Shown here: positions 5,946 through 35,193 of the stretch, piece after piece
How positions within the stretch are numbered: the first letter of the stretch is position 1
Layout: every line of letters begins with the position of its first letter
NCBI RefSeq assembly: GCF_001194135.2
Contig: NC_068983.1
Location: 121,237,446 to 121,301,445, forward strand
DNA length: 64,000 bases
Source of the DNA: Octopus bimaculoides
Lineage: Eukaryota
Reading direction: 5' to 3'
Notes under the pieces: generated by a model
The model's input: only the letters and a program-made list of their open reading frames with translations
Told to the model about the DNA's origin: nothing
Databases searched by the model: none
Translations under genes and position numbers: made by a program

Positions 5946-7032
5946 ATTTGATTTCGATATGGTTGGTTTAAATGTTAAAAATTTAAGTTACATACAAGTG
6001 GCCTTTGTCATGTTACTACTAGGACCTTGTGACTGTGAAGCAAACTTCATAACACACAAACAAACAAACAAACAAACAAACAAGCATTGGAGTGCCTTAA
6101 ATTTGAAGGAACTGGGAAATGATGTAAAGGATGAGCACATTGGCAGCAGCAGTCTAATCTGTTATTTCTGAGTGACTAACCCATGACAACAACCTACTCC
6201 ATCATGTGTGATATCATATGCAATGAACTTATGTTAACTAAATAAACCATTGCCCAGCTTGCAGACATAGTGGTGACAGTTATATCCTGTCCAAGCACAT
6301 GGCCCTAAGAATAAAGAAATGAATTAATGTTGCTTCTGCATCAACAATACCACATGACCTAAGTTGACCAATAGAGGCCTAACATCTAGAAGCTATCTTG
6401 AATTCACTTCAAATTCTATTACATTTCTCTAGATACCTGGTGAGATGGGTTTGTCCTACAAAATTTTAAGTCATGTGGAGCTTAATCAAGCTATTATTAA
6501 ATAATATATGATATATGATATATCTCAATATATGTATTACATAGATAGTCCTTTTGTTACATACGTTCTGCTGTTTTCGTGTGTGTGTGTGTGCTTGGCA
6601 TTGGTCAAACAATGTTTTGTTATGGTGAAAGATACTTGCTGCTATGTAGAATCAATCCTATAATTGCACATTTATAAGGAAACTTCTTAACCACAAAGTA
6701 ATGCAAAGTATGTTACTGGTATTTTTTTTCATTAGCTCTTCTACACATGGAAGACAAAATTATACTAAAATTATTAAGACAACAAATTAGATTCATTTAG
6801 ATAACTAGAATATGGCACTTTCTTTAGTGCATTCAAACCTCTGGAAATTCTGGTTAAGCTGGAGTATCAGCTTATGCACTAAGAAGAGACAGTGGTAATG
6901 GTGAAAGTGGTGGCAGTAGTGGTTACTGTTGGAAGCTGTTTTATACTGATCTTACCTGACTGGGAATAGATGATCTTCAACAATAGAACCCTTCATCTCT
7001 GTCTAACAGAGCAGAAAGTAGTACTCCTGCTT

Positions 7033-9069
7033 CATCATTGTTTAACCTCCGCTTTCCATGCTAGCATGGGTTGGACGATTTGACTGAAGACTGGCAAACC
7101 AGATGGCTGCACTAGGCTCCAATCTGATCTGGCAGAGTTTCTACAGCTGGATGCCCTTCCTAACACCAACCATTCCGAGAGTGTAGTGGGTGCTTTTACA
7201 TGCCACCGGCACGAAGGCCAGTCAGGCAGTGCTGGCAACGGCCATGCACAAGTGGTGTTTTTTACTTGCCATCTGCACAGGAGCCAGTCCAGTGGCACTG
7301 GCAACAACCTCACTTGTATACTTTTTCACATGCCACTGGCACAGGTGCCAGTAAGGCGACACTGGTAATGATCACATTCGAATGGTGATTTTTACATGCC
7401 TCCAGCACAGAAGCCAGTCAGCTGCTCTGGCAGCGACCATGCTCGGATGGTGCTCTTAGCGCTCCACTGGCACAGATGCCAGTCATTGAATTTGTGAATT
7501 TGATTTGACTTCACTTGCCTCAACAGGTCTTCTCAAGCAGAGGTTAGTGTCCAATGAAGGAAAGGTACGCATAAGTGGGCTGGTTACACCCCCTGGCATA
7601 GGCCATGGTTATGGTCTCACTTGGCTTGCCGGGTCTTCTCACGCACTGCATATTTCCAAAGGTCTCAGTCACTAGTCATTGCCTCGGTGAGGCCTAATGT
7701 TCGAAGGCCGTGCTTCACCACCTCATCCCAGGTCTTCCTGGGTTCTACCTCTTCCACAGACTCCCTCAACTGCTAGGGTGTGACACTTTTTCACACAGCT
7801 GTCCTCATCCATTCACACCACATGTCCATACCAGTGCAGTCCTCTCTCTTGCACTCTGATGCTTCTTAGGTCCAACTTTTCTCTCAAGGTACTTACACTC
7901 TGTCGAGTATGCACACTGACATTACACATCCATCGGAGTATACTGGCTTCATTCCTTGTGAGCTTACGAATGTCCTCAGCAGTCACGACCCATGTTTCAC
8001 TGCCATGTAGCATGGCTGTTTGTACACATGCAACATACAGTCTACCTTCTACTCTGAGCGAGAGGCCCTTTGTCACCAGCAGAGGTAAGAGCTCTCTGAA
8101 CTTTGCCCAGGCTATTCTTATTCTAGCAGCTACACTTTCAGTGCACCCTCCCCCGCTACTGAATTGGTCACCTAGGTAACGGAATCTATCAACTACTTAT
8201 AGTCTTTCTCCCTGGAACGTGGCGGAAGTTGTTCCCTGCACATTTTCAGTGTTTATTGCTTCTGAGCATTTGCCACATACAAAAACTATCTTCCCAGTTA
8301 GCCTTCTTTGATATTGCTGCACCTCTTATGTGTCCATAGCTTACACTGCATACATCTTATAGAGTTTCTACCTATGTTTTTTCTACAGATCGAGCAGGGC
8401 CATCTACCTGAAGGGATTTGTGGTTTGTCTGCCTTCCTACTTATTAGGACTTTAGTTTTAGCTAGGTTGACACTAAGGCCCTTCGATTCTAATCCTTGTT
8501 TCCACACCTGAAACTTCTCCTCTAGTTGTGAGAGTGACTCAGCAATTAGAGCAAGGTCATCAGCATAGAGGAGCTCCCAGGGCATCCTGTCTTGAATTCC
8601 TCTATTATTGCCTGGAGGACTGATAAATAGGAGGGGGCTGAGGACTGAACCTTGGTGGACCCCTACCTCTACCCGGATTTCTTCACTGTACTCGTTGACA
8701 ACCCTCACCTTACTGACAGCGTCCCTGTACATGGCTTGCACAGCTCTCATTAACCATTCATCTAACCCTAGTTTCCTCATTGACCACCAGATAAGGGATC
8801 GGGGGACCTTGTCAAAGGCTTTCTCCATGTCAACAAAAGCCAGGTACAGAGGTTTATCTCTGGCTAGGTATTTCTCCTGCAGCTGTCTTACCAGAAATAT
8901 AGCATCAGTGGTGCTTTTCCCTGGCACGAACCTAAATTGCATCTCATGTAAACTGACTCTCTCCCTAATTAGTTGGGCTACGACCATCTCCGTGACCTTC
9001 ATTACCTGATCCAACAACTTGATACCTCTGCAATTATTTGTATCTAAAGCATCACCTTTACCTTTGTAG
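7033..9069 (-). mobile_element. 5'-truncated RTE-clade LINE (RT ORF2 fragments plus structured 3' UTR)
   Basis: ORF 8298-9017 has RT motifs (QFRFVPGKSTTDAIF, AFVDMEKAFD, GVHQGSVLSPLLF, YADD). ORF 7813-8076 has MLHGSETW and WYGHV. The 3' end is (CAT)n-type. Confidence 0.95.
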
Positions 9070-18666: not shown

Positions 18667-18943
18667 CATTATCATCATCATCGTCGTCGTCGTCATCATC
18701 ATCATCATTATCATCACTGTTGTTGTTGTTGTCAGACAGACATTTGTTTTCTAGAGATCAGTTCAAGTGAGTGGTTTCAGCTGTTGAGAGGAGAAGTAGG
18801 TGATGTAAAACCTAAGCAGTATGTTATCAGACTACACTGGTGACTTGCAAGTGTAATACTGTCTCACCTCAGAGAGGTACTCACTAAAATAGGTTCTACC
18901 TGAGACACCTATTGTACTAATTTGTTATTTTCTGCCCTTACAG

Positions 18944-19105
18944 CATGACTCGAGGAAAGCTGAAAACTTTGACAAGATGTTCACCTCTAAGGATGTCAAA
19001 ATGACCCCAACAGACAGTCTAATCATCATGAATATTGATGATAGTGCATTCAGGAACTTCTCTTTTGTCAATCCCTTTTTCAGTCAAATACAATCAGACT
19101 CTTGA
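18944..19105 (+). CDS. PRKCB-like: Conventional PKC, alternative C-terminal (V5) exon A (proximal, divergent), 53 aa + stop
   Basis: Branch-point-like TACTAAT (~18915-18921), pyrimidine tract and cag| acceptor at 18943. Phase-0 frame HDSRKAENFDKMFTSKDVKMTPTDSLIIMNIDDSAFRNFSFVNPFFSQIQSDS*. It carries the AGC-kinase C-tail motifs NFDxxF, turn-motif TP (codon 19004-19006) and hydrophobic motif FxxFSF (Ser codon 19061-19063). Confidence 0.88.
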   Translation, partial: HDSRKAENFDKMFTSKDVKMTPTDSLIIMNIDDSAFRNFSFVNPFFSQIQSDS

Positions 19106-19570
19106 GCGGTAGTATGTATACTTTTGCTTTTTTTCATTTCCTTCCCTTCCACAAGAATGCTGCTTGTAACTGTGATGACCATATTTTGTAAAGACTGGTT
19201 CCACTTAACAACCAGCCTCATCATAAATGCCTACCAACTCATAATTAAGACTGCTAGGATTTGAATGCTTTCTGAAGTGTCATCATTTGATTAGACAAAA
19301 ATTCAGTTAACACAATATGCAGTAAATTAACAAGACCTATTAACAATCTATGTTCGCTTCATTATTTATTAGTAGGCTTCCATTAACATCAGCCTTATCC
19401 TAACTATTCCAGAAGTGCCTATAAAGGTTTTGGATATTGGCTTTTCTCGCCAAGCTAAAACGTAACAACAAAAGTCTCTCACTCTGTCCAATCAAGGAAT
19501 CATATTTCGTTCAATACAATTTGTAAATCAGTTTCAGTTCTTTTCTCAAATATTCCTATTCCTCCTTTTT

Positions 19571-19612
19571 ATTAAAATAATGAATTTAAGTTTCATGTGC
19601 ACCCTTATTAAA
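19571..19612 (+). promoter_or_regulatory. Candidate variant poly(A) signals (ATTAAA x2) for proximal exon A
   Basis: ATTAAA at 19571-19576 and 19607-19612, ~470-500 nt after the exon A stop. I saw no AATAAA closer. Hexamers are common in AT-rich DNA. Confidence 0.3.
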
Positions 19613-21464
19613 ATCATGAAGACAAGTTAAGATATCATCTATTTCATTATAACTTGTCCATTGGTTAAGGGTTGTTATGGTAGTGCTACTGCAGATCTTG
19701 ATGATAAAGGAGGAGATAGAGACCCATAATGTCATCTCCTGTTCACACTTCTGATGGAAAATCTTAATGGCATAGCTCATCAGTACTCATGATTGTGTGA
19801 TAATGATGGTGGTGGGGAGCCATTTCCTTTCTGGGGTCATGGTTGACCGACATCTGGCGACAATTGATTACAATTCACTGACAACACCTGAGCTCTCTCA
19901 GGATACACCTGCTGACAGATGACACTCTTGTTAAAAGAGGGATATGTCAATACTGTAGGGATGCAGGAGATGAAGAAGCTGAGTTTAATGTTGCAAATTT
20001 CATTGGTGTTGTTCTTAAATCACTTTAGTTCACACACTATAATTAATTTAATAGTTTCCATATTGTGGCTGACAAGGTATTTAACTCCAGGCTTCACACA
20101 CTGTGCTTAATGCATTGTAGTTAACACATACTCTTTCACATATTGATTCCTGGAGCAATTATATTTTATCTTTTCTCTTATTAATTATTTATATCCATTA
20201 TATTGTAAGGTGATGTTGCTTTATTTAATCTTCGTTTCCTAATTATTTGTTATCAATCAGAAGGAGAAGGCTGAAGTGATAAAGTATTTGATTTTTCTGT
20301 TCATGAGTTATTAGTTCAGATCCATCACTGACATTTCATTTTGTTCTGCTGGAACATTTATTCTTTGTTAACTCGGTCTATCTAACTGTCAACAACAAGT
20401 ATCAGATTCAATATGATTCAGCTACAGACAAAAGTCTCTCGATTGGTTCACCTAGCTAATTGTTAGCAAAGAGTTAATACCAGATTAGTCTGGTCCAGTC
20501 CTTGTCTGCCTCGCAACTTGATCCAGAATCCATATTTTTGTTTATGCATCTGATATGTTTAATTGTCTATTCCACATGAAATTTATCATGTAGGAACAAC
20601 CACCACTACATGAGTATCTTTCTCACATGTGAGTGATTCTCACCATTATCCATTTAGACCTTATACAGATTCTCTCCTTCCATGTGTTTTCCTTCTTTAC
20701 AGGTTAGCCATAAAATTATTTTCTCCCAACAATACACAAACATCTAAGTCTATAAACCCCATTTCTACTCATGTTAGCATGGAATGAATTGATGCAAAAT
20801 AGTTCTGAAGCCTCATATAGGCTGGGTGTTTAAATATGTTGGCCTGTTGCTTTAGATAGCTTTCCTTCAATTGTCAGTTTTGATTTTTCCCTAGTCTGTC
20901 TCTGCCAGTCCTCACAGTTGTGTGATTGCCGCTCACTGAAATCTTTAATTGCATATCAATCATATGAACCCAGTTTTTCCATGCAAATATAAACCTTTCC
21001 ACTTGCAGAACCAGATAATGTTAACTAGACTATGCCCAGAACTTTAACACATTGCTAAGTATTGGACCAATTGCTTTCAAAGATCTTCTCGAATAGAACT
21101 GTTCAAAGTTACTTAATAACAGTAGGAGCAACAACAATAACCACAATATCAAAAGCAGTCAAAGCAAGAACACTGGCAAACATAACCACAAGCATTACCA
21201 TAATGAACAAAGTCAAAAGACAAAATCATTAAATGCAACATTTGATTGAAACTGAACTATTTTTATTCTTGAAAAGGTATCTGTAACACATGGATTGTAG
21301 ATTTTATTCCCAAATACAACAACAGAATAGAAATACATAACAACTAGGAACTAATTAAATGTTAATCAGATTGCAGTAATTAATTCATTCACCTAATTGT
21401 TATTTAGAAATGAATGTTCTCAACTCTTGTATTGATACTCCATACTCATACATACACGCCAACA

Positions 21465-21549
<85 letters not shown>

Positions 21550-21553
<4 letters not shown>

Positions 21554-23535
21554 GGGGACCAGCTATCCGAATTGACAGTACCTTGGTAGATAAAGCAATT
21601 AAGGGTATGAAGATAGGAAAAGCCCCCTGCCCATCAGGAATCACCGCAGAGATGCTCGAAATATCTGGCAGTGTCGGCTATAGCTTAGTCACCCATATAG
21701 TCAACCAGGTGATACATGAAGGAGTCATACCCAATGACTGGTGTAGCAGCATCATAGTCAACTGCTACAAAGGTAAAGGTGACGCATTAGACACAAATAA
21801 TTACAGAGGTATTAAGTTGTTGAATCAGGTAATGAAATCCACAGAGAGGGTTGTAGCCCAACTAATTAGGGAGAGAGTCAGTTTACATGAGATGCAGTTT
21901 GGGTTTGTGCCAGGGAAAAGTGCCACTGATGCTATATTTCTGATAAGACAGCTGCAGGAGAAATACCCAGCCAAAGATAAACCCCTGTACCTGGCTTTCA
22001 TTGACATGGAGAAAGCCTTTGACAGAGTCCCTCGATCCCTTATCTGGTGGTCAGTGAGGAAACTAGTGAGAGCTGTGCAAGCCATGTACAGGGACGCTGT
22101 CAGTAAGGTGAGGGTTGGCATTGAGTATAGTGAAGAATTTCGGGGAGGGAATCCACCAAGGATCAGTCCTCAGCCCCCTCTTATTCATCATAGTCTTCCA
22201 GGCAATAACAGAGGAATTCAAGACAGGATGCCCCTGGGAGCTCCTCTATGTTAATGACCTTAGTCTAATTGCTGAGTCACTATCAGAATTAGAGGAGAGA
22301 TTTTAGGTATGGAAGCAAGGATTAGAATTGAAGGGCCTTAGAGTCAACCTAGCTAAAACTAAAGTCCTAATAAGTAGGAAGGCAGACAAACCACAAATCC
22401 CTTCAAGTAGATGGCCCTGCTCGATCTGTAGAAAAGGCGTAGGTAGAAACTCTATAAGATGTACCCAGTGCAAGCTCTGGACACATAAGAAGTGCAACAA
22501 TATCAAAGGAAGGCTAACTGGGAAAATAGTTTTTGTATGTGGCAAATGCTCAGGAACAATAAACACTGGAAATATGCAAAGAACAACTTCTGTCACATTC
22601 CAGGTAGAAAAACTACAAGTATTTGATAGCTTCCATTATCTAGCTGACCAAGTCAGTAACGGGGGTGGGTGCTCTGAGAGTGTAGCTGCTAGAATAAGAA
22701 TAGCCTGGGCAAAGTTCAGAGAGCTCTTACCTCTGCTGGTGACAAAGGGCCTCTCGCTCAGAGTAAAAGGCAGACTGTATGATGCATGTGTACAAACAGC
22801 CATGCTACATGGCAGTGAAGCATGGGCCATGACTGCTGAGGACATGCGTAAGCTTGCAAGGAATGAAGCCAGTATGCCCGCTGGTTGTATAATGTCAGTG
22901 TGCATACACGACAGAGTGTAAGCACCCTGATAGAAAAGTTGGACCTAAGAAGCATCAGATGTGGTGTGGAAGAGGGACGACAACACTGGTATGGACATGT
23001 GTTGCGAATGGATGAGGACAGCTGTGTGAAAAAGTGTTACACCCTAGCAATTGAGGGAACCTATGGAAGAGGTAGACCCAGGAAGACCTCGGATGAGGTG
23101 GTGAAGCACAACCTTTGAACATTGGGCCTCACCGAGGCAATGACTAGTGACAAAGACCTTTGGAGATACGCTGTGCTTGAGAAGACCCAGCAAGCTAAGT
23201 GAGACCATAACCCATGGCCTATGCCAGTGGTGTATAACCACTTATGAGTACCCTTCATTCATTGGACAATAAACTTTGCTTGTGAGGACCTGTTGAGGCA
23301 AGTGAAATCAAAATCGCTGATGTAGCCAATGACAGTACCACCTGATTGGTGCCAGTGGAACGTTAAAAACACCATCCAAGTATGATCATTGCCAGGGCCA
23401 CTGACTGGCTCCCGTGCCGGTGTCACGTAAAAAGCACCAGTCAAGCATGATCATTGCCAGCATCTCCATACTGGCTCCTGTGCCAGTGGCACGTGAAAAA
23501 CAACATTCAAGCACGGTCGTTGCCAGTGCCGTCAG
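21550..23535 (+). mobile_element. RTE-clade LINE, 5'- and 3'-truncated, same family as 7033-9069
   Basis: ORFs 21583-22254, 22328-22921 and 22885-23118 are frameshifted RT pieces. YADD has decayed to YVND, there is an 18-nt in-frame deletion near 22060, and the repeat-rich 3' UTR stops before the tail. Confidence 0.95.
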
Positions 23536-24590
23536 GCATTTAAATACATCAATGAAAAGCATTATCACTATGTAGATAAACTCTGAGGTTAAAACACAGG
23601 GCTCTTTTTTGTATATAAAACTGTGAATAGCTTGTATAATTTCAAATAGTTATTTCTTGTGCAGTTTCAACTAGTTATTGTCTTCTCCTTTAGAGTATCT
23701 ACTCATGTTCAAAGTGACTCACAGATTACTTTGGAAAAATTCAGTGAGTTAGAAGTATCAATTTTGCTCATTTACACATTAGTACATTTCCTAACAAAGT
23801 TGTTTAATAGCTAAAGTACTGAGACAGTGGTATGTGGTTAAAGTTTGAATAAGTTTACATACCTGTGTTTAAGAAGCGTACATTCAATAAGTTTACATAC
23901 CTATGTTTAAGTCTGTGTACATATGGCAGACCAATTTAAGTTTTATACTATAAATGCTATTTTCTCCATGTTCAATCAGTAAAATATGTCACCAACCTCT
24001 TTTGAAGCAGTAAAAATTCCTGAGACTAGTTCAGACCAATCTTTTTCTAGTTGCACAAAGAAAATCAACAGAGTGTATAGTTCATAGAGTGTCGTTGATG
24101 CTATGTTGATGGATACCATTAACCCTCAGTAGCTGATGCCATCTTAGTCTTAGGTTTAAGATTCAGGCTGACTCTCTCCTAAATTGAAATGCCATCTATC
24201 AAAAGATTTAGTCTCAGCTATGTTGACTTGAGTAACAAGAAATGAAGTATTTTGCTCAAAAAACACAACATACCACTTGAGACTTACAACTTCATGATCA
24301 TGAATCCAACACCCTAGCCACTAGATGAAACACCTTCTCATAATGCTATCTTACTATAAATAAGTACTGTTATTGGGTGTTTTCTTCTGTAAGTAGAACC
24401 AGAACTTAATAACTCACTATTGTTTAATACATTTACAGTGCTGACCTTCAGTTGTGCCCCTCCTGCAAACCAGCCTCTTAAAAGTCAATTCCATTTTTTT
24501 TTTACCTCTCTTCATTTCATGAGTTACTATGCTGTTGTATCTTGTCTCCAGTAACAGATTTTCCTGACGAATCATATACAGTTGCACACT

Positions 24591-24635
<45 letters not shown>

Positions 24636-25432
24636 TCACGATGTATCAGTTATGATCTCTAGGTATGAAGAAAGAAAAATTACATAATATGCTAAAATAT
24701 TTCAATGTCAATACACTACAAATTTACTACTCTTGTATACATTCTAGCTGACTCTGAAATACAAATATATCTTTACAAGCTTTGCTACATTTTATAGTTA
24801 TTTTTGTGGCAATGTTTAAATAGGATACAACAACATTATGTTTAGAGGCTTCTTTACAGTTTATGGTTATATCACAGTCATGGCAGCTTCTAACTTATCC
24901 TCTCCACCAATTTTTGTTTATTAAACATTTTATTCTTGCATGCTCTTACTCTTTTTTTTTCTTTTTCTTTTATTTAAACTATGTATTTTGATTTATCCAT
25001 TTTTTTCACCCTATTTTACACTTTATTTGCATTTCTTTCTGAAATTCAAATTGTTGCTTTTATTTTCTTTCTTTCTTCATTTTAATTTCTGGGGGGGGGG
25101 GGGTTCTCTTTTATTTCTCTCTCGTTTCACTACTTCTCATACTTCCCATTCTACTCACCTTGTTTCCAAATTTCCTCACTTTTTTCAGTTTTTCCCCACA
25201 AAATTATTTACATCCACCCACTTTTAATTTTCTCAACCTGAATGCATTACACCAAACATGAGTGTCTTCACCAATTTCAACCACTTAATCTTTTCTCATC
25301 TTGCAACTCATCTTTAGAAGAAATTCTTAATAGCTCTCTTACGAATGATAGTGATTTAGTTTCAGTTGGTTTGGATATATTAATTATTAGTGATAGAAGT
25401 ATTAGTACCAAAAGGCAATCTTTATATCCAAC

Positions 25433-25673
25433 TTAATGTGGATGTCATGTTTGAAGGCCAAATAATGTGTTATTAGCCTTGAAAGAATCTCATGTAGGCG
25501 CTTAGAGCATAAAAACACACATACCTAGATCGTAGCAGATGAGAATCATTTATTACGGATGGCCATCTGCTATGATTTATGTCAGTGCTTTTATATACCA
25601 TGCACCTATATGAGAGGGTCTCTCAAAAGCTAATGATGCTGTTTTTGGCATTCTAACAAGACATCCACGTTAA
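25433..25673. repeat. Long imperfect palindrome / old MITE with TTAA at both ends
   Basis: Arms of ~105 nt: taatgtggatgtc...gtagcagatg and catctgctatg...gacatccacgtta, with a ~22-nt loop. Confidence 0.75.
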
Positions 25674-26669
25674 TGTACAGGTATATGAACAGACAGGTAG
25701 ATAGACATCATTAAAGCAAACATATGGTTGTAATGTTACAATGGAATATCCAACTAATATATATACTAGTATAAATAGATACTAGTATTCTTCTGTATGC
25801 TGAGGAAGTACTTTTTTATAATACTAATATTGATATTAATGAACTTATTGTATACACTGTTCAGGTACACTACAACTCACTGAAAAAGAGTAAAAGAGAT
25901 GACTGAAAGTGGCAATAAGTCAAGTGAAGAAAGACAGTAGTGATAGTCATAAGTGTTTCAGTAGTTCACAGTGCTAATCCAGAGATTTAAAATGCAATGT
26001 TTAATGCTCACTGTGTACTTTCTAAAGAATTTTACCCTGTTTCAAGACATAAGAATTGGAAGCAAAACCTTTTCAGAATGCCCTTAGCATTTGTAATATA
26101 CTGAGTATAGGGTAAGGTAGCTATTAAAAACACAGGTTAACACATGTTCTAGAAAAATCTAATTTTGAAGAGGTAAGGTGATATAAGTTTAGGGTGAACT
26201 ATTCAGGTTATAAGGACAATGTAGCTAATACAATAAAACGACAAAAAAAGCCATGCTTCAGAATAAAAATTATCATGTTTAGGGAGATTTAGTAATTAAT
26301 TGAATGACTTTTCTGTGGACTTGGCTTGATATTTTGATAACCAATTGACAGTGACCATCCGCCATAAGAAACACTATGTGTTATAAGAAACAGTTAGGAA
26401 ATATTTAATATCTGTTTCTAGTTAGTTTCCTCTATTTGTGCATGTGCTCTGAAGCCATGTACTTATGCAATAATTCTATTTTAACATCATATATAAGTTA
26501 CTTTGTACCAAGTGGATTGTTCTATCCTCTGACCTAGTTCTCCATAACAACTAAAAGAGCTGACAAACTCTTCTCTTTTATCACTTGACATTCATTTACA
26601 GATCTATGTATGGCTACCTAGGCAGAACTCTATAGTGATACTTTCTTTTTTTATCCCTTATTTATCTCT

Positions 26670-26887
26670 AATCTTTTCTACTCTAGGCACAAGGCCTGAA
26701 ATTTTGGGAGAGGGGTCCAGTCAATTAGATCGACCCTGGTACACAGCTGGTACTTAATTTATCAACCCCGAAAGGATGAAAGGCAAAGTCAACCTCGGTG
26801 GAATTTGAACTAAGAATGTAAAGACAGACGAAATATCGCTAAGTATTTTGCCTGATATGCTAACGTTTCTGCCAGCTCACCGCCTTA
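26670..26887 (-). mobile_element. tRNA-derived SINE, family B
   Basis: On its own strand: tRNA-like head plus core GACTTTGCCTTTCATCCTTTCGGGGTTGATAAATTAAGTACCAG (MetaSINE-like from memory, unverified). Confidence 0.85.
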
Positions 26888-27504
26888 CAAAAGAAATGTC
26901 ATATATTTAAATACTTTCAGTTTAATATTAACAACTGGAAATTAATTCATCTTGATATCACAGTGTGAAAATCTCAGGTCAATGACATGGTTCATTTGAT
27001 CATATAAAGAAGCTCAATAAGAACCAACATATTTTCTTGCATTAGCCATAAGTAGAATTGACCTGAACACTACACTACAATGAAACACTCAACAGCTTCA
27101 CCATGCTGAAACAGAATTTCACATCAATGGTGAAACAGAATTTACCATCACAACTGTGATCTGAATGCTGTACCAATATGATTTGATACATTGACCTTTC
27201 AAGTGATCGCCTAGTATCTACTTTACTCACTTAGTTCAGAAAATATGAAATAAATAGTAATAGTGTAGAAGTGTTTATCTAATTAAATACACCTCATTTC
27301 ATGAAGAAAGGTGAATCAGTTGATTGTGAATGAAAGGAGGCTCTCACTCTAAGTGATTAGTTCATTAGACCTAATTAGATAGACATTTAAGCTACTCAAT
27401 TATAGGCAGTGATAATATCAAAATTAATCATAATTAATCAAATTTTTGCCATAAGTGTTTTGTGACAGAAATCTTATGTATGATGTAACCCAGAAGTTTA
27501 TCAA

Positions 27505-27890
27505 TTGTTACTATGTGGAGAACATGAGGCAACTACCATATGGTGTGGAGAGCCATAGATAGAACTACCATATAACTTATTGACTATAATACAACTGCCA
27601 TATAGTGTGGTGATTATCACTGAACTATCATATTGTTTGATGACTAAGATAAAAATACCATAGTGCATCATGGTCATGATCATAGTGCGGAGATTATGAC
27701 AGAATTACCATGGATCAATGAGGACTATGATAGAATTGTCATAGTGTGAAGGCTATAATAAAACTACTCTATTGTGTGAAGACCATAATAGATCTAACAT
27801 ATATGTATAGTGTAGTGACTATTATAGAACTATCACAGAGTATATAGTGACCCTGATAGAACGACCATAGCATGGTTAGCATATTATAAG
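27505..27890. repeat. Degenerate ~30-bp minisatellite
   Basis: About a dozen units resembling catatagtgtggagactatgatagaactac. Confidence 0.7.
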
Positions 27891-30800
27891 GGATATTTCA
27901 CATACAGGAGGACCCAGTAGTTAGTATATTTTATAATGTCAAACACTATGTAGACAGAGAATCAAAGAAATTTATATTTATTAGAAGTATATAGTTGTGG
28001 ACTTCCTCAGTGAAAAGGAGAATTATAACAGACAGGGACGTTGTGTTTGATGGTTGAGAAGCTATCAAGATTATTTAGTTGTCAAGGGAAACAGTGAGAT
28101 GAGTAGGTTTCTGAAGTATAAAAGTGATGTTAATTAAAGAATGTAATGTAATATATGTAGTGAAATAAGAAAAGTAGAGTAGCTGTTAAGATGGAAGCAA
28201 AGATGACAATAAAGATGTATAAGAGATGGTTGGTATACTTCTGACAGACATGGGATTGAATAGGATTCACTCACCTAAATGATGAACCAGGACTTGTTTA
28301 AATAAACTGTTAATGAAATTCCTAACACCTTTCCAGAGATGCTTTTTAAACAATTAATAAATGTTCAAATGTTCTAATTTTTTCTCCTCTTTAGCGTGAC
28401 TACCTTTGTGACTACCATTTGTATCTTCTCACTTCTCACCTCTCACTAATGTCTGTCTGATAACTGAAAGTAATTTCTTTGTTGTACTTGTTGACACACA
28501 GACAGATTGTGTAATTCATTTAGTTTATTATTCACATTAATGCAAAAAGATAATCAGTAATTTCATTTTGTAGTTATTTTATTTTCCTAAAAAAATTATC
28601 TCAATATGTCATTCCAATCGACTTTCCTATTATTAAGATATTGCATAAAGTCTGTCACAAGTGTTATACTTAAGTGTATTGTATGTGTTCATAGTATGTG
28701 TTATATTTGTATAGTGTATATTATGATTATGTATAATATATTTATATTTGTATGTATGTGGTTATGATGTTTAGTATAAGTTATAAGTATATCTAGCATG
28801 TATCTTATAATTATGTGTAGTGGGTGTTATTTTTACGTACAACACCAATTAGAGAGAATATCAAACTTGGTATTTACCAGGAGGATTGTTGCCATTAAAA
28901 ATAACACAATATTTGTATTCTAAGTGGTAGGTATAGTTGTTTATGTAAGTAACAGCTAATTGTCCAATACACATGCAGACATATATATGTGTGTGAGTGT
29001 GTACCAATAGAAATAGTCTTCTGCATTTAGTTATTTTTGTGATACTTAATGATACTGTAATATTTTTATGTATATTTCCAGGGGCCTTACTTATGTGCAG
29101 CATGTATTATGCACGCATTGCCCCTCATGCTATAGAAGTATTATGGTCATGAAAATGTTGCTATAGCATGGAATTCTGTAATAGGAAACCTGCTTTCCCA
29201 GTGAGTCCTATCTACATTGACTTCCTTGTAACATAGAAATCAATTGTGAAATTGGCTTCACAATCGTGGAATTCCATGTTAAGGCAAGATTTTCAGGATT
29301 ACAATGCTTCTGCAATTCAAGGGATACCAATAATTATATATAGTATTTGTTATTGTTATATACATTGTGTATTGTTTATGTGTGTATTATGTGTTGCAAT
29401 CATGTCCATTGTACAAATGTGTTGTATATGTTATGGGTATGTATAGCAATTGTTAAAACATTAACATGCCTGTAATGTATGTTGTAATGTATATCTAATT
29501 GTTGATACCTATGTAATGTATTTTTAATTGGTAATACCAGTGCACTATATAGTAAATTATTACCATCCTTGTAATGTAAGTTGAATTATTAATACCAATG
29601 ACAGCATCAGCTTTCTTAGTTTCTATTTCCAATCATAATTCTGTTTATATGGTTAAGACATAAACTTGATTCAGACACACACTGCTGTTGCAATGACCAA
29701 CAAAAACAGCTGCAGTGTTATTTATGAGAGAAAAAAAACTACAAGCTCTGTTAACTGACTGATTTAATGTAACTGAGATACATGTCTATAACTTCCTGTC
29801 ACAGCAATGGTGTCAATCTTGCTGCTAACTGCATCCCTTGTGTTGGCTATTCACCTCCATTGTTCATAGAAGCAGTCAAAGAGTCAACTGTCTGAATTGT
29901 CTTCTTTTCCATTTCCTTGTTTCTTTCCTTCTTTGAATAAATCAAACCACTTTTTCTTCAAAATTCTCTAGCATAAGCTGAAAGCTTCACTCATTTGATT
30001 GAAAGGTGTTTTATAATGTTCTACATTTTAGCTTCCTTTGATGTTTTCATAGATTATATTTTAGTGAACTTACGAGTGGTTGGTTACAATAGCATCAGTC
30101 AATGTGTGTGCAAAGAAATAATTGCACTGACATGGACATTAGCTGTGAATGGATGTTGATTTAGAACAAAAGTGCAATGGTATGTTGACAGAGGAATATA
30201 CAGTGAATTCCAAGTAGAAGAAGACATAGGAGAAAGTGGTGAGTTCAGATCACAGAATGACATGGCTTACATACAAGATGATAAAAGAATAAAACTTGTG
30301 ATTTGTTGTACAGCAGAGCCATCCTACCCATACCTGCTTAGAAACATTGACATTAAAACAGTAAGGATGAAATAAACAGTAGTAATCTCTTAGTTCTCTA
30401 CCAATTGTGATCATGAATTGTTTTCAGTGAAAGCAATTGAAACAGTATTAAGTTAAAATCGCCATCTGTGGATCATAATAAATGTATATACACCGTAGAA
30501 AGGTATATTACTGTGGTTTTTTGTTTAAGATAGAACCTCTTCATAGACATGTCGTGTTAAAAACTCAATGTCTAGTGAAGCAAAATGAACATTGTCACAG
30601 CAGGGACTCATAGAAACATTAGATACATTTCACTCTTCATGAGGCTTGTACCCATTTGTTACTTCTTTGAATGAAATTTGTGCTTTGATATATAAGAAAC
30701 AGTGAATAACATATTCATTTATGTTGCAGAATGCTTACTGGGCACTAAAAATATTCGGCCAATGCAATTGAAATAGAATTAAGATTAAACAGGCATTTGT

Positions 30801-31086
30801 GTATCATACTAAATGTATATGCCCTGTAGAAAGGCATTCTGCTGTGGATTTTGTCTGAGTGAAAATTTCTTCATAGATATTTTACGTTAAAAATGTAATG
30901 CATTATATATATCAAAGCAAAATGAACACAGTCATTATATGAAATGGCAGCTGCTATTAACAATATCAGAAACATCTCATCTGATTACAAGGCTTGTTTG
31001 TTGTTATTCCATGTTGCTTCTGATCTCTTCCACCACCAATTCTATTTAGTATTGTCTTCAGTATACATGTCTTCCTTCTTTTTCTT

Positions 31087-31128
<42 letters not shown>

Positions 31129-31404
31129 CTGATATATCTATGAATTGGAAGCAATAGTTCATCTTCAGTCAATGTTTTATTGATATTTTCAGTTGATCTA
31201 CCTATACCCCATTTATTTCAGACTATACCATCCACTGGCTGATATTCTAAGACTGCAATTTTATTTGTAATATTTTCCATTGTTCTTCTGCATTTTTCAC
31301 TAATAGCTAGTTTCAGTTCATTAAAATTCTTACTTTCATGTAACAAAACAAGCTTTTTTTCATTCTTGTATTTTTATTATTATTATAAATAATAATAATA
31401 ATAA

Positions 31405-31985
31405 TAATCCTTTCTACTTAAGGCACAAGACTTGAAATTTTAGGAGAGGAGGACTAGTGGATTAGAACAATCCCCAGTATTTCACTGGTACTTAGTTTAT
31501 CGACCCCAAAAGGATAAAAGGCAAAGTCAACCTTAGAGGAATTTGAACTCAGAAAATAAAGACAGATGAAATGCCGCTAAGCATTTTGCCTGGTGTGCTA
31601 ACAATTGTGCCAGCTCACAACCTTAATAATAATAATAATAATAATAATCCTACTTACTATAGGCACAAGGCCTAAAAATTTGGTGGGAGGGGCCTGATTA
31701 CATCGACCTCAAATTCTCAAATGGTACTTATTTCATCGACACCAAACTCAAAAATGATGAAATAATAACAAGGAAAGCTGGCAAAGACAATAACACAACA
31801 GGCTTAGCAGCATCTTGTCCATCTTTACGTTCTGAATCCAAGTTCCACTGAGGTCAACTTTGCCTTTCATCCTTTCGGGGGTCAAAGAAATACATACCAG
31901 TTGAGAACTGGGGTCGATGTAATTGACTAGCACTCCAAAACCATAAAAAAAATTTCAAGCCTTGTGTCTATAGTAGAAAGACTTA

Positions 31986-32027
<42 letters not shown>

Positions 32028-32267
32028 GGAGAGCCAACAGAATCATTAATGGACAAAATGTTTATGATATTTCTTCCAACTCATTAAGCTCCAAGTTCAA
32101 ATTTCGCCAAAATTAGCTTTGCCCTTCAGCCTTTGAGGCTCAATGAAATATATAGTAATCAAGTACTAGGACCAAAGGTATTGGTTAACCCCCTTCCCTC
32201 AAAATAGCTGGCTTTGTGCCAAAATTAGAATTATTATCATCGTTATTATTATCATTATTATTATTAC

Positions 32268-32302
<35 letters not shown>

Positions 32303-32490
32303 TTATTATTATGCTTTGCAGAATTTTGTCCATTTTTATGTTCTGAGCTCAAATTCCACTGAGGTCAACTTCACCTTTCACCCTATCAAGGTCAATGAAA
32401 TAAGTACCAGTTGAGCACCGGGGTCAATATTATCAACTAGCCCCTCCTCCAAAATTGCGGACCTTGTGCCTATAGTAGAAAGGATTATTA
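31405..32490. mobile_element. Cluster of five family B SINEs separated by (TAA)n/(TTA)n
   Basis: Minus copies at 31405-31625 and 31645-31745. Plus copies at ~31770-31985, ~32025-32230 and ~32310-32490. Confidence 0.85.
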
Positions 32491-34040
32491 TTATTATGTT
32501 TGACTTTTGTTTTGCATTTGCACAAGTTGGATCCAAGTCTCACCCAGAGACCTCAAGAGACAACAAGTTAGAAGTTCATGTAGGTGTTATGCCTAGGGTA
32601 CCATATATTTGGATTTGTACAGTTTTGTTCAAGTGAACGTTTAAGAAACCATAAGAAAATTATGTGTTTGCTTTAAAATTTGAGATCACATAGACAGTAT
32701 TTTACGTAGGATATGGGCAGTTCCCATGAGAACTATCTTTTGAACTTCAGCCATTTTGGGGTTTCCTGGTATCTGAGCTAGGTAGTAATCAGCCCGTTTC
32801 GCTGTCATTCCCAGGGCACCTATGACAATAGGTATTGTTTTCGTCTTCNNNNNNNNNNNNNNNNNNNNNNNNNNNNNNNNNNNNNNNNNNNNNNNNNNNN
32901 NNNNNNNNNNNNNNNNNNNNNNNNNNNNNNNNNNNNNNNNNNNNNNNNNNNNNNNNNNNNNNNNNNNNNNNNNNNNNNNNNNNNNNNNNNNNNNNNNNNN
33001 NNNNNNNNNNNNNNNNNNNNNNNNNNNNNNNNNNNNNNNNNNNNNNNNNNNNNNNNNNNNNNNNNNNNNNNNNNNNNNNNNNNNNNNNNNNNNNNNNNNN
33101 NNNNNNNNNNNNNNNNNNNNNNNNNNNNNNNNNNNNNNNNNNNNNNNNNNNNNNNNNNNNNNNNNNNNNNNNNNNNNNNNNNNNNNNNNNNNNNNNNNNN
33201 NNNNNNNNNNNNNNNNNNNNNNNNNNNNNNNNNNNNNNNNNNNNNNNNNNNNNNNNNNNNNNNNNNNNNNNNNNNNNNNNNNNNNNNNNNNNNNNNNNNN
33301 NNNNNNNNNNNNNNNNNNNNNNNNNNNNNNNNNNNNNNNNNNNNNNNNNNNNNNNNNNNNNNNNNNNNNNNNNNNNNNNNNNNNNNNNNNNNNNNNNNNN
33401 NNNNNNNNNNNNNNNNNNNNNNNNNNNNNNNNNNNNNNNNNNNNNNNNNNNNNNNNNNNNNNNNNNNNNNNNNNNNNNNNNNNNNNNNNNNNNNNNNNNN
33501 NNNNNNNNNNNNNNNNNNNNNNNNNNNNNNNNNNNNNNNNNNNNNNNNNNNNNNNNNNNNNNNNNNNNNNNNNNNNNNNNNNNNNNNNNNNNNNNNNNNN
33601 NNNNNNNNNNNNNNNNNNNNNNNNNNNNNNNNNNNNNNNNNNNNNNNNNNNNNNNNNNNNNNNNNNNNNNNNNAAGATGCTTTCTTGCTTTCATGTTTTA
33701 AGACAAGTTTTAGCATCCAGTCCTCAGAGTTTTTCAGATAGGTGTCTAGGCCAATTGTGGCTACCTTCATTGATAATGCCAGCTGTAGAAGTCCTCGGCC
33801 TCCCTCTTTTCTTGGTAGATAAAGACGTTCTATATCTGCCTTAGGGTGGTGCATTCTATGCATTGTCAACAGTTTTCGTATTTTTCTGTCAACATTACAT
33901 ATTTCAGTAATTGACCAGTTAACGATATTGAAACTGTAAGTCACGACTGGTATGGCTAGAGCATTGATCGCTTCGATCCTGTTTCTCACGTTCAGCTCTG
34001 TCTTCAGTATTGCTCTCACCCTGCGATAACATTCCCCTTT
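32490..34040 (-). mobile_element. 5'-truncated R4/Dong-clade (RLE) non-LTR retrotransposon, gap inside
   Basis: 34040-33674: YRRVRAILKTELNVRNRIEAINALAIPVVTYSF...HHPKADIERLYLPRKEGGRGLL (RT thumb). 32848-32686: KTKTIPIVIGALG...VLMGTAHILRKILSM* (RLE C-terminus). The 3' UTR ends in (TAA)n. Confidence 0.9.
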
Positions 34041-34325
34041 TCATCCATTACCTTTTCCAGTCTATGTTGGTACCAAGCACCCGTTACCTCGTATCCATAC
34101 TTCCTGTATAGTAGCCAGTGAAGGTTTTGGGCTACTTTGTCGTGTCTATGCTTGTACTCTTTCTGCACAAGACTTTCACAGGCACTAACAATGTGAGTCA
34201 TGCTTTTGAACCTCTTTCCACACATTCTGCAGAGGTTCTTTGCACTTGTGTGGTATATATCCCTTTTCACTGAGTTGGTATTCAATGCCTGATCCTAGGC
34301 AGCAGTTATTAGGCTTCCTCGTCTT
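34035..34325 (-). mobile_element. Extra CCHC zinc-knuckle fragment of the same LINE type, out of order
   Basis: AA*DQALNTN...CRMCGKRFKSMTHIVSACESLVQKEYKHRHDKVAQNLHWLL...WYQHRLEKV. Confidence 0.85.
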
Positions 34326-35040
34326 TTAAGCTGTTAATTTCACGGTGGAACTATGATGCTCCCCCACTACTCCTGCTTTTGATCAGAGATGCACATATTG
34401 TCAGCCACTAAGGGACATGCTCAAGTGGTTAAGGTTAAACAACTGACAAGTAAATCTGTGATATTGTGCAGAATATTTGCTATAATGCTATTTCTGCTTC
34501 AGCATTGAATTTGCCTGAAGTGTAATGAAAAATAGGTCAGTTTCAAAACATTGATGTCCATATCACAAAAGCAAAGTTTCAAGGGAATAGTTATCATTTC
34601 CTTTAATTTCTAGGTAAAAGCAAGTAGGAAATAATACTTACTAACCAAAGGCAAAAAAAAACAAGAAGAACAACTTCCTCACAATATAAAGTCCCATACA
34701 CTTCTTTGCAGATCTTGGCATTTCCTATTCTTCCCTCACTGCTGATAGCTTTGATTGTCCACCTTCAATCCTTGATGTTCTCTTAAATACTTTATGCTAT
34801 TTAGTTATATCACATCATAAACCCAAATCTTGCCACAGTAAAGCTTTACCCTTTTTTTTTTTAGCCTATCCATGTGAAGCTGATAAAATAAATATCAATG
34901 ATACACAGGTTTGAATCAATAAATCACAGCTCTCCAACAAATTCTAAGTTTAAATTCCTATTGTTGCTCAGCTACTCTTTTGCTTTTATACACATAATTG
35001 TTTTCATTCTCAATTCTTTTATTCATTTTTCTTTTAACAG

Positions 35041-35193
35041 AAAAGCAAAAAAGATGTCAGCAATTTCGACCGCGAATTCACCAGTGAAGCTCCAAAGTTG
35101 ACACCAACAGACAAACTGTTCATTATGAATTTAGACCAGACCGAGTTTGCTGGATTCTCCTACATCAATCCTGAATTTGTTATCTCTGTTTGA
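35041..35193 (+). CDS. PRKCB-like: Conventional PKC, alternative C-terminal (V5) exon B (distal, betaI/Apl I-like), 50 aa + stop
   Basis: Long T-rich tract ending ttttaacag| at 35040. Phase-0 frame KSKKDVSNFDREFTSEAPKLTPTDKLFIMNLDQTEFAGFSYINPEFVISV*. It matches 37/50 residues of the human PKC-betaI tail as I recall it (confirm by alignment). Confidence 0.96.
   Translation, partial: KSKKDVSNFDREFTSEAPKLTPTDKLFIMNLDQTEFAGFSYINPEFVISV

What the first reader, a model, noticed from the sequence alone, without database searches (positions are those of the whole stretch)
18944..35193. Two homologous alternative last exons in an invertebrate conventional PKC: a betaII/betaI-like switch
Seen: two phase-0 exons with good acceptors, 16 kb apart, each encoding a complete ~50-aa AGC C-tail ending in a stop. 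They share 22/46 aligned residues and place NFD at the same offset. Neither is in the ORF track. Established: vertebrate PRKCB makes betaII (proximal exon, AENFD...NID...FSFVN) and betaI (distal exon, SNFD...TPTDKLFIMNLDQ) from this same junction. Here the distal exon is betaI-like. The proximal exon is a mosaic, with AENFD/NID/FSFVN as in betaII/alpha but TPTD and IMN as in betaI. Inference: cephalopods make two cPKC tail isoforms, through either an ancient bilaterian exon pair or an independent exon duplication. I cannot tell whether this is already described; alternative tails are, from memory, also reported for nematode pkc-2.
Basis: partly seen in the sequence, partly recalled or inferred. 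Interest (0 to 1): 0.9.

Follow-up and report, generated by a model that had tools for sequence, protein, structure and literature searches.

The report
Octopus PKC gene's two alternative tails
The window holds the two alternative last coding exons of the octopus calcium-dependent protein kinase C gene; the pair is real and under selection, but it is already in public gene models and is the published, bilaterian-old counterpart of the vertebrate PKC betaII/betaI exon pair.

Summary
Exon A (18944-19105) and exon B (35041-35193) each follow a good acceptor. Each encodes a complete PKC C-terminal tail ending in a stop, and they share 22 of 46 residues. No other PKC exon lies in the window.

RefSeq already models both. 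O. bimaculoides isoform X1 ends in exon A and X2 in exon B, each 100% identical to the window, and their first 605 residues are identical. O. sinensis, O. vulgaris and Argonauta carry matching models.

A-type tails also occur in chitons, bivalves, gastropods, annelids, an onychophoran, chelicerates and crustaceans. In a tick and a springtail both tails come from one gene.

In a tree of 51 tails, B-type tails group with vertebrate betaI. A-type tails group with vertebrate alpha, betaII and gamma. The pair is therefore ancient, not a cephalopod duplication. Two papers (NAR 2021; GBE 2022) already date the PRKCB exon pair to Bilateria.

The assembly gap lies in the A-B intron, inside a retrotransposon, and touches neither exon.

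One small addition: in a bivalve transcript, exon A is a true terminal exon with its own 3'UTR, unlike the mammalian betaII cassette exon.

Interest is low.

The parts
18917..18943 (+). Polypyrimidine tract and AG acceptor of exon A (ctaatttgttattttctgcccttacag)
   Evidence: Read directly. In a bivalve, the homologous acceptor is the exact junction used in a spliced transcript: L005 base 1840 corresponds to L003 base 10106.
18944..19105 (+). Exon A (proximal, A-type, alpha/betaII-like tail): 53 codons plus TGA stop at 19103-19105. NFD at 18965-18973, turn-motif Thr (TPTD) at 19004-19006, hydrophobic-motif Ser (FSF) at 19061-19063.
   Evidence: Translation. Pfam Pkinase_C 38 bits. 100% identical to the tail of O. 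bimaculoides isoform X1 P0257, and to O. sinensis P0255 and P0273. Orthologues are 75-76% identical in a chiton and a bivalve.
19106..19612 (+). Probable 3'UTR start of the exon-A mRNA form, with candidate poly(A) signals ATTAAA at 19571 and 19607 (inferred, not shown)
   Evidence: Pattern scan. There is no conserved sequence or donor site after the stop in the 3-species alignment. By analogy, the bivalve transcript has a 3'UTR colinear with the genome for at least 923 nt.
19106..35040 (+). Interval between the two tail exons: intron for the exon-B form, 3'UTR plus downstream DNA for the exon-A form. It contains repeats and one assembly gap but no PKC-coding sequence.
   Evidence: tblastn with PKC alpha and the octopus proteins finds nothing here.
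21583..22921 (+). Degenerate non-LTR retrotransposon fragment (reverse transcriptase plus PHD-like finger) inside the A-B interval
   Evidence: ORFs. Pfam RVT_1 E=4e-11 and PHD E=1e-5.
32849..33673 (.). Assembly gap (825 N) inside a minus-strand retrotransposon ORF. It is not in either exon.
   Evidence: Gap map and translations of both flanks.
35005..35040 (+). Polypyrimidine tract and AG acceptor of exon B (...ttcttttattcatttttcttttaacag)
   Evidence: Read directly. The same acceptor context (..LQ|KS[RK]KDVSNFD) appears in dozens of single-exon ORF calls from other animals.
35041..35193 (+). Exon B (distal, B-type, betaI-like tail): 50 codons plus TGA stop at 35191-35193. NFD at 35062-35070, turn-motif Thr at 35101-35103, hydrophobic-motif Ser (FSY) at 35158-35160.
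   Evidence: Translation. Pfam Pkinase_C 58.6 bits. 100% identical to the tail of O. bimaculoides isoform X2 P0349 and O. vulgaris P0343. 70-93% identical to B-type exons across animals, including vertebrate PKC beta.

Best explanation
The window covers the 3' end of the single octopus conventional ('calcium-dependent') PKC gene, which spans about 340 kb in O. bimaculoides. After the last shared exon (ending ...QPPYKPKI, phase 0, upstream of the window), the pre-mRNA is joined either to proximal exon A or to distal exon B. Each supplies the whole V5 tail and its own stop codon.

Both tails keep the elements needed for a mature, active kinase: the NFD motif, the FxxxFT motif, the TP turn-motif threonine and the FxxFS[FY] hydrophobic-motif serine. 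They differ at about half the other positions. In mammals those positions set isoform-specific partner binding and localisation. The likely result is two kinases with the same catalytic core and regulation but different scaffolding, localisation or turnover.

The pair is orthologous to the vertebrate PRKCB betaII (proximal) and betaI (distal) exons and dates from before the protostome-deuterostome split.

Shown here: the exons, their annotation in one gene, their conservation, their order, and their orthology classes.

Inferred: the functional difference, and that in octopus exon A is used as an alternative last exon with its own polyadenylation site, as in the bivalve transcript, rather than as a stop-containing cassette spliced on to exon B as in mammals.
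For: - Exons, acceptors and stops. Pfam Pkinase_C hits.
- RefSeq isoforms X1 and X2 of O. bimaculoides are identical for 605 residues and end in exon A and exon B respectively. O. sinensis and Argonauta have A-tail models and O. vulgaris a B-tail model.
- The gene look-up keeps only the longest product of a gene. X1 is on record, spanning 340,645 bp on the 168-Mb record of GCA_001194135.2, and X2 is not. That fits one gene but does not prove it.
- Selection: Argonauta exon A differs from Octopus at 1 of 53 residues, against 19 of the other 605. Between mollusc classes dN is 0.14-0.27 for A and 0.06-0.10 for B, with synonymous sites saturated. The DNA alignment shows conservation ending just past the NP[FY][FY] motif, before the stop codons, which lie at different positions.
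- Same order elsewhere: a gap-free chiton-like contig, L001, has A at 2552-2707 and B at 6120-6269 on one strand. An annelid gene model fuses A then B.
- Same switch in arthropods: tick X1/X2 and springtail X2/X7 differ only after KPKI| or KPRI|.
- Orthology classes: NJ tree with bootstraps.
- Transcript evidence in a mollusc: L005 carries a 666-aa uninterrupted ORF. It matches genomic L003 from the first base of exon A, and its 3'UTR is colinear with the genome for 923 nt after the stop.
- Published: the PRKCB homologous exons are conserved in invertebrates and dated to Bilateria. The mammalian betaII exon is a stop-containing cassette upstream of the betaI exon.
Against: - No octopus RNA read was examined. 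The RefSeq X-isoforms are computed models, so use of exon A in octopus rests on annotation plus conservation, not on a junction I saw.
- The terminal-exon mechanism is shown for one assembled bivalve transcript only, and the poly(A) signals near 19571 and 19607 are plain pattern matches.
- The tree rests on 48 columns, distance methods and no outgroup. The exact B-only split has 192/300 support.
- Continuity across the N gap between A and B in this assembly is supported only indirectly.
- The functional difference between the tails is extrapolated from mammalian betaI/betaII work recalled from memory.
Confidence: 0.9

Rival explanations
1. The exon pair arose by an independent duplication in cephalopods or molluscs, and it resembles betaII/betaI by convergence.
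For: Only about 46 alignable residues are available. GBE 2022 treats many exon events shared between phyla as convergent, and it files D. melanogaster Pkc53E under 'different region, convergent'. A-type tails are much more divergent than B-type tails, so the A 'clade' could partly be a group of everything that is not B.
Against: - B-type tails from molluscs, annelids, flatworms, arthropods and vertebrate betaI share a near-invariant block, TPTDKLF[IM]MNLDQxEFxGFS.
- A clade of all vertebrate tails appears in 0/300 bootstraps, while the A/B split appears in 278/300.
- The proximal-A, distal-B order and the same junction are seen in octopus, a chiton, an annelid model and mammals. The same junction, without order information, is seen in a tick and a springtail.
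- The literature dates the PRKCB event to Bilateria.
Confidence: 0.06
2. Exon A is an unused relic: a decaying duplicate or pseudo-exon that gene-prediction software wrongly built into an isoform.
For: I saw no octopus transcript. RefSeq X-isoforms are predictions. The first word-indexed protein search with exon A found nothing.
Against: - The frame is intact and every functional motif is kept.
- Exon A differs at 1 of 53 residues between Octopus and Argonauta, no more divergent than the rest of the protein.
- Intact orthologues exist in chitons, bivalves, gastropods and annelids, with dN far below dS.
- A spliced bivalve mRNA uses the orthologous exon.
- The empty result was a limit of the word index, since the exhaustive search found the orthologues.
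Confidence: 0.02
3. Exon A and exon B belong to different genes, either tandem paralogues or a scaffolding mis-join across the N gap at 32849-33673.
For: An 825-N gap lies between them, 1,367 bases before exon B. Its continuity cannot be proved from the window.
Against: - No other PKC exon lies between or around them, so a second gene copy would have nowhere to sit.
- RefSeq models on the 168-Mb chromosome-scale record (GCA_001194135.2) give both tails to proteins with identical first 605 residues.
- The gap flanks are two parts of one retrotransposon ORF in the correct order and strand.
- A gap-free chiton contig shows the same arrangement.
Confidence: 0.02
4. The gene and the pair are as described, but in octopus exon A is a short stop-containing cassette spliced on to exon B, which then serves as 3'UTR, exactly as in the mammalian betaII mRNA.
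For: This is the mammalian mechanism for the orthologous exons. No octopus transcript was examined.
Against: - No sequence conservation and no conserved GT donor follow the stop in the octopus, chiton and bivalve alignment.
- No GTRAG donor-like site lies within 500 nt after the stop. About one would be expected by chance, so this is weak evidence.
- The bivalve transcript runs at least 923 nt past the stop, colinear with the genome.
Confidence: 0.35

Closest known systems
Vertebrate PRKCB betaII/betaI alternative C-terminal (V5) exons
   Same: - Two homologous exons of about 50 codons lie in tandem after the same junction (KPKA| in human, KPKI| in octopus).
- Each exon carries its own stop.
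- The alpha/betaII-like exon is proximal and the betaI-like exon distal.
- Both keep NFD, the turn motif and the hydrophobic motif.
- Exon B is about 76% identical to betaI-type tails, and exon A about 50-55% identical to alpha/betaII tails.
   Different: In mammals betaII is a cassette exon and the betaI exon then becomes 3'UTR. The one mollusc transcript examined uses the A exon as a terminal exon with its own long 3'UTR. Octopus A has TPTD and IMN where vertebrate A-type tails have TPPD and I[AR]N.
Published set of bilaterian-old tandem duplicated exon substitution events (Martinez-Gomez et al., NAR 2021 PMC8373072; GBE 2022 PMC9741552)
   Same: PRKCB is one of the events reported as conserved in invertebrates. 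Fig. 5B gives the crown-of-thorns starfish as the example, and Table S2 gives the age as 'Bilateria'. The octopus pair is an instance of this event.
   Different: The passages I read name a starfish example, not molluscs. The distribution across protostomes and the tree shown here extend the claim but do not change it.
RefSeq 'calcium-dependent protein kinase C' isoforms X1/X2 of Octopus bimaculoides, O. sinensis, O. vulgaris and Argonauta hians
   Same: The tails are identical to the window's exon A and exon B, and the upstream 605 residues are shared.
   Different: None at the protein level. These are computed models without an accompanying description or any tissue data.
Arthropod conventional PKC ('protein kinase C, brain isozyme' / Pkc53E-like) A/B tail isoforms
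   Same: Tick (Ornithodoros X1/X2) and springtail (Folsomia X2/X7) isoforms differ only by an A-type or a B-type tail after KPKI| or KPRI|.
   Different: Arthropod A tails have GENFDP.FT and TPAD. All holometabolous insect models in the list carry only B tails. The D. melanogaster Pkc53E exon event is classed as being in a different region.

Membership tests
AGC-kinase C-terminal tail of conventional PKC (V5 region; Pfam PF00433 Pkinase_C) | Significant match to the Pkinase_C profile above its curated cut-off | tested here: met
   Exon A scores 38.0 bits and exon B 58.6 bits against a cut-off of 20.9.
AGC-kinase C-terminal tail of conventional PKC (V5 region; Pfam PF00433 Pkinase_C) | NFD motif, Thr-Pro turn motif and FxxF[ST][FY] hydrophobic motif present in the right order | tested here: met
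   A has NFD, MTPTD and FRNFSF. B has NFD, LTPTD and FAGFSY.
AGC-kinase C-terminal tail of conventional PKC (V5 region; Pfam PF00433 Pkinase_C) | Attached to a C1-C1-C2-kinase protein | tested here: met
   P0257 and P0349 carry the precomputed Pfam families C1_1, C2, Pkinase and Pkinase_C and end in these tails. The upstream exons are outside the window.
PRKCB-type tandem duplicated terminal-exon substitution (betaII/betaI) | Two homologous tail exons in tandem on one strand within one gene | tested here: met
   The exons lie 16 kb apart on the + strand with no other PKC exon nearby. X1 and X2 share residues 1-605.
PRKCB-type tandem duplicated terminal-exon substitution (betaII/betaI) | Both exons are joined to the same upstream exon at the same position, and only one of them is translated | tested here: met
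   The gene models give ...QPPYKPKI|HDSRK... and ...QPPYKPKI|KSKKD.... Each exon ends in a stop. This was seen in gene models, not in octopus reads.
PRKCB-type tandem duplicated terminal-exon substitution (betaII/betaI) | Proximal exon orthologous to betaII/alpha-type, distal exon orthologous to betaI-type | tested here: met
   NJ tree: the A/B split appears in 278/300 bootstraps and a clade of all vertebrate tails in 0/300. The mammalian exon order is taken from PMC3537621.
PRKCB-type tandem duplicated terminal-exon substitution (betaII/betaI) | Mechanism: the proximal exon is a cassette that is spliced on to the distal exon, which then becomes 3'UTR | tested here: inconclusive
   This cannot be tested for octopus without RNA data. 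In a bivalve transcript the proximal exon is terminal, with at least 923 nt of colinear 3'UTR. No conserved donor follows the stop.
PRKCB-type tandem duplicated terminal-exon substitution (betaII/betaI) | Both isoforms expressed, with tissue- or signal-dependent ratios | not testable with these tools
   No octopus RNA-seq or proteomics was available. Purifying selection on both exons is indirect support only.

The most novel reading that the evidence does not exclude
An exon pair kept since the bilaterian ancestor may be chosen by different RNA-processing routes in different phyla. In molluscs, including octopus, the route would be competing last exons, each with its own polyadenylation site. 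In mammals it is a stop-containing cassette spliced on to the betaI exon. In cephalopods the choice would then be governed by cleavage and polyadenylation or by intron kinetics across a 16-kb interval, perhaps in a neuron-specific way.
Probability: 0.5. Interest if true: 0.3.

Novelty: already known. Interest (0 to 1): 0.15.

Why it matters
The V5 tail controls PKC maturation, stability and partner choice. An exon pair kept for more than 600 million years implies that animals need two differently targeted versions of one calcium-dependent PKC. For octopus this is a ready-made, annotated handle for asking which neurons or tissues use which tail.

As a discovery it adds little. The isoforms are already in RefSeq, and the deep conservation of the PRKCB homologous exons is published.

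What this check adds:
- Evidence that the pair is spread across protostomes (molluscs, annelids, chelicerates, crustaceans, a springtail, an onychophoran).
- A tree that rejects a separate, vertebrate-only duplication; the same A/B split also argues against a separate molluscan one.
- A hint that molluscs use the proximal exon as a terminal exon rather than as a cassette.

Tried and rejected
- Word-indexed protein search with exon A alone found no candidate. This was a limit of the index, not absence, because the exhaustive search then found orthologues at 55-76% identity.
- The word-indexed search with exon B returned only short single-exon ORF calls. I therefore built probe rows of arthropod or flatworm kinase ends fused to A-type tails, purely to reach full-length proteins. 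The profile used all columns, so ranking was driven by the kinase domain. I classified the tails afterwards by script.
- Loci L002, L003 and L004 did not reach a second tail exon or an upstream kinase exon within the DNA available. Only L001 showed both exons.
- I tried to measure the true A-to-B distance, and so the gap length, in the chromosome-scale assembly by comparing the gene ranges of X1 and X2. The X1 range was too long to return DNA, and X2 and O. sinensis X2 are not on record because only the longest product is kept.
- Pfam did not recognise the two gap flanks. Treating them as one retrotransposon rests on reading their translations and on my memory of such elements.
- dN/dS as a ratio is not meaningful between mollusc classes because dS is saturated. 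I report dN and the Octopus-Argonauta protein comparison instead.
- The donor-site and poly(A)-signal scans after exon A are weak evidence either way.
- tRNA and Rfam scans of the window found nothing.
- Literature searches for a description of octopus or Aplysia PKC tail isoforms found none.

Full report
**1. What is in the sequence**

On the + strand, 18944-19105 reads HDSRKAENFDKMFTSKDVKMTPTDSLIIMNIDDSAFRNFSFVNPFFSQIQSDS followed by a stop (exon A). On the same strand, 35041-35193 reads KSKKDVSNFDREFTSEAPKLTPTDKLFIMNLDQTEFAGFSYINPEFVISV followed by a stop (exon B). Each follows a pyrimidine-rich tract and a CAG acceptor.

Both peptides pass Pfam Pkinase_C well above its curated cut-off (38.0 and 58.6 bits against 20.9), so this is not a chance open frame.

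The kinase exons lie upstream of the window.

**2. The assembly gap**

The window has eleven runs of N. The flagged one, 32849-33673, lies between the exons. It is 13.7 kb after exon A and 1,367 bases before exon B, so no PKC reading frame crosses it.

On the minus strand the right flank encodes part of a retrotransposon-like ORF (...LYLPRKEGGRGL...KHESKKAS). The left flank encodes what reads as the C-terminal end of the same kind of ORF (KTKTIPIVIGALG...ILSM, then a stop). Strand and order are as expected if the gap sits inside one repeat copy. Pfam does not recognise either flank, so this is my reading and not a test.

Three independent results show that A and B belong together:
- RefSeq models on the 168-Mb chromosome-scale record of O. 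bimaculoides give both tails to one gene (section 3).
- A 9,976-base contig without any N from another mollusc has the A exon at 2552-2707 and the B exon at 6120-6269 on one strand (L001). Its A tail differs by one residue from the chiton Liolophura sinensis, so it is probably from a chiton.
- No other PKC exons exist between A and B that could make up a second gene.

**3. It is already annotated**

A profile search that reached full-length proteins returned the following models. Their tails were read.

| Species | Isoform (id) | Length | Tail |
|---|---|---|---|
| O. bimaculoides | X1 (P0257) | 658 aa | ...QPPYKPKI + exon A, 53/53 |
| O. bimaculoides | X2 (P0349) | 655 aa | ...QPPYKPKI + exon B, 50/50 |
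| O. sinensis | X1 (P0273), X2 (P0255) | 661, 658 aa | A |
| O. vulgaris | X2 (P0343) | 655 aa | B |
| Argonauta hians | X1 (P0258) | 658 aa | A |

All are named 'calcium-dependent protein kinase C'. O. bimaculoides X1 and X2 are identical over residues 1-605 and differ only in the tail.

The coding range of X1 spans 340,645 bp. X2 is absent from the gene-position record. That record keeps only a gene's longest product, so the absence fits X1 and X2 being one gene.

The window is therefore from an Octopus species. The tails alone cannot say which one.

**4. Exon A is a live, selected exon**

The exhaustive search with exon A found single-exon ORF calls at 55-76% identity, clearly closer than any B-type exon.

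Named full-length models with A-type tails exist in many groups:
- a chiton (Liolophura)
- bivalves (Mya, Crassostrea, Pinctada, Argopecten)
- gastropods (Patella, Bradybaena)
- annelids (Capitella; in Dimorphilus the model fuses A and B in that order)
- an onychophoran
- a tick, spiders and a scorpion
- crustaceans
- a rotifer relative (Seison)

Octopus and Argonauta exon A differ at 1 of 53 residues, against 19 differences in the remaining 605.

Between mollusc classes, non-synonymous divergence is 0.14-0.27 for A and 0.06-0.10 for B, while synonymous sites are saturated. In the DNA alignment, conservation ends just after the NP[FY][FY] motif, before the stop codons, which lie at different positions in the three sequences.

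Direct transcript evidence comes from a bivalve. Contig L005 carries an uninterrupted 666-aa ORF whose protein is 87% identical to Mya arenaria. It matches genomic contig L003 at 99.2% from exactly the first base of the A exon, and nothing upstream of that base matches within 10 kb. The predicted acceptor is therefore the real junction in that species.

**5. Ancient pair or new duplication**

Tick (Ornithodoros) X1/X2 and springtail (Folsomia) X2/X7 isoforms are identical up to KPKI| or KPRI| and then carry an A-type or a B-type tail. The switch therefore exists in arthropods too.

I aligned 51 tails. A neighbour-joining tree on 48 columns gave these results:
- B-type tails of molluscs, an annelid, a flatworm, arthropods and vertebrate betaI fall on one side.
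- A-type tails of protostomes and vertebrate alpha, betaII and gamma fall on the other.
- This split is found in 278/300 bootstraps when one odd spider tail is counted with the B tails, and in 192/300 without it.
- A clade of all vertebrate tails, which a vertebrate-only duplication would predict, is found in 0/300.

The proximal-A, distal-B order matches mammals, where the betaII exon lies upstream of the last (betaI) exon (PMC3537621).

The pair therefore predates the protostome-deuterostome split. The tree is short, distance-based and unrooted, so it supports this conclusion rather than proving it.

TPTD and IMN occur in chiton, bivalve and gastropod A exons alike.

**6. What is already published**

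Martinez-Gomez et al. (NAR 2021, PMC8373072) list PRKCB among tandem exon duplications with equivalent exons in invertebrates. Their example is the crown-of-thorns starfish, and Fig. 5B maps residues conserved 'in vertebrates and invertebrates'.

Their 2022 paper (GBE, PMC9741552) gives the event's minimum age as Bilateria in Table S2. It notes exon-substitution events in PRKCB, Pkc53E and pkc-2. Table S5 classes the D. melanogaster Pkc53E event as being in a different region.

I found no paper describing the octopus or Aplysia tail isoforms. The public gene models do show them.

**7. How it most likely works**

Shown:
- Two mutually exclusive coding ends exist for one gene.
- Each end keeps the NFD motif, the FxxxFT stretch, the Thr-Pro turn motif and the FxxFS[FY] hydrophobic motif.

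Inferred from established PKC biology (from memory):
- Both isoforms mature and signal as calcium- and diacylglycerol-dependent kinases.
- They differ in tail-mediated partner binding, localisation or turnover, as betaI and betaII do.

For the RNA mechanism, three observations favour a competing last exon with its own polyadenylation site over the mammalian stop-containing cassette:
- The bivalve transcript continues at least 923 nt past the A-exon stop, colinear with the genome.
- No conserved donor follows the stop.
- No GTRAG-type donor lies within 500 nt after the octopus stop. This is weak evidence.

I put about 0.55-0.65 on this for octopus. ATTAAA hexamers at 19571 and 19607 are candidate signals only.

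**8. Verdict**

The finding is a correct reading of raw sequence and a sound inference. However, it rediscovers an annotated isoform pair and a published ancient exon duplication. I rate its novelty as 'already known' and its interest as low.

The modest additions are the breadth across protostomes, the tree, and the hint that the mechanism differs from mammals.

Noticed in passing
window 8298-9017 (-) and 21583-22921 (+): Two degenerate copies of the same non-LTR retrotransposon family (reverse transcriptase followed by a PHD-like zinc finger) lie in opposite orientation. One is upstream of exon A and one is in the A-B interval. The finger gave a spurious weak match to the PKC C1 domain.
   Followed up: partly
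window 32690-32848 and 33674-34019 (-): The flagged N gap sits inside a second retrotransposon-like ORF. The flanks read as an upstream part and the C-terminal end of one element. Pfam recognises neither flank.
   Followed up: partly
window, whole: The window contains eleven runs of N (10-825 bases, 2,675 N in all). Many long 'ORFs' are only translated microsatellites (YIYIYI..., CVCVCV...). There are no tRNA genes and no Rfam matches, and no coding sequence other than repeats and the two PKC exons was recognised.
   Followed up: partly
L001 2507-3034: The database protein P0104 reads through the A-exon stop (TGA shown as W), and the contig does not translate to it under the standard code. The gene caller apparently used a code in which TGA is tryptophan.
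   Followed up: no
P0314 (Liolophura sinensis isoform X2): This chiton model has an extra stretch, GSCPCKKQSGGMCK, between ...QPPYKPRI and the A tail. It could be an additional micro-exon or an alternative acceptor upstream of exon A.
   Followed up: no
P0306 (Dimorphilus gyrociliatus): This annelid gene model joins a truncated A tail (...FEGFSL) directly to a complete B tail (KSRKDVSNFD...). It is probably an annotation artefact, but it shows A lying upstream of B in an annelid.
   Followed up: no
P0328 (Uloborus diversus isoform X2): This spider tail has a B-type start (DVSNFDRQFT) and end (NPEFIAHV) but an A-like middle (TPPDKVVLLGIDQGVF). It sits between the two classes in the tree and lowers support for the exact B split.
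   Followed up: no
P0273 vs P0255 (Octopus sinensis X1 vs X2): The two O. sinensis models both carry tail A. Aligned to the O. bimaculoides protein, X1 has three extra residues after position 522 in the kinase domain and X2 has none. This suggests a second, small alternative splicing event in the gene.
   Followed up: no
one search list of arthropod models: Every holometabolous insect model returned has a B-type tail only. Chelicerates, crustaceans, a springtail and an onychophoran have A-type tails as well. This suggests loss of the A exon within insects, which fits Table S5 of PMC9741552 placing the D. melanogaster Pkc53E event in a different region.
   Followed up: no
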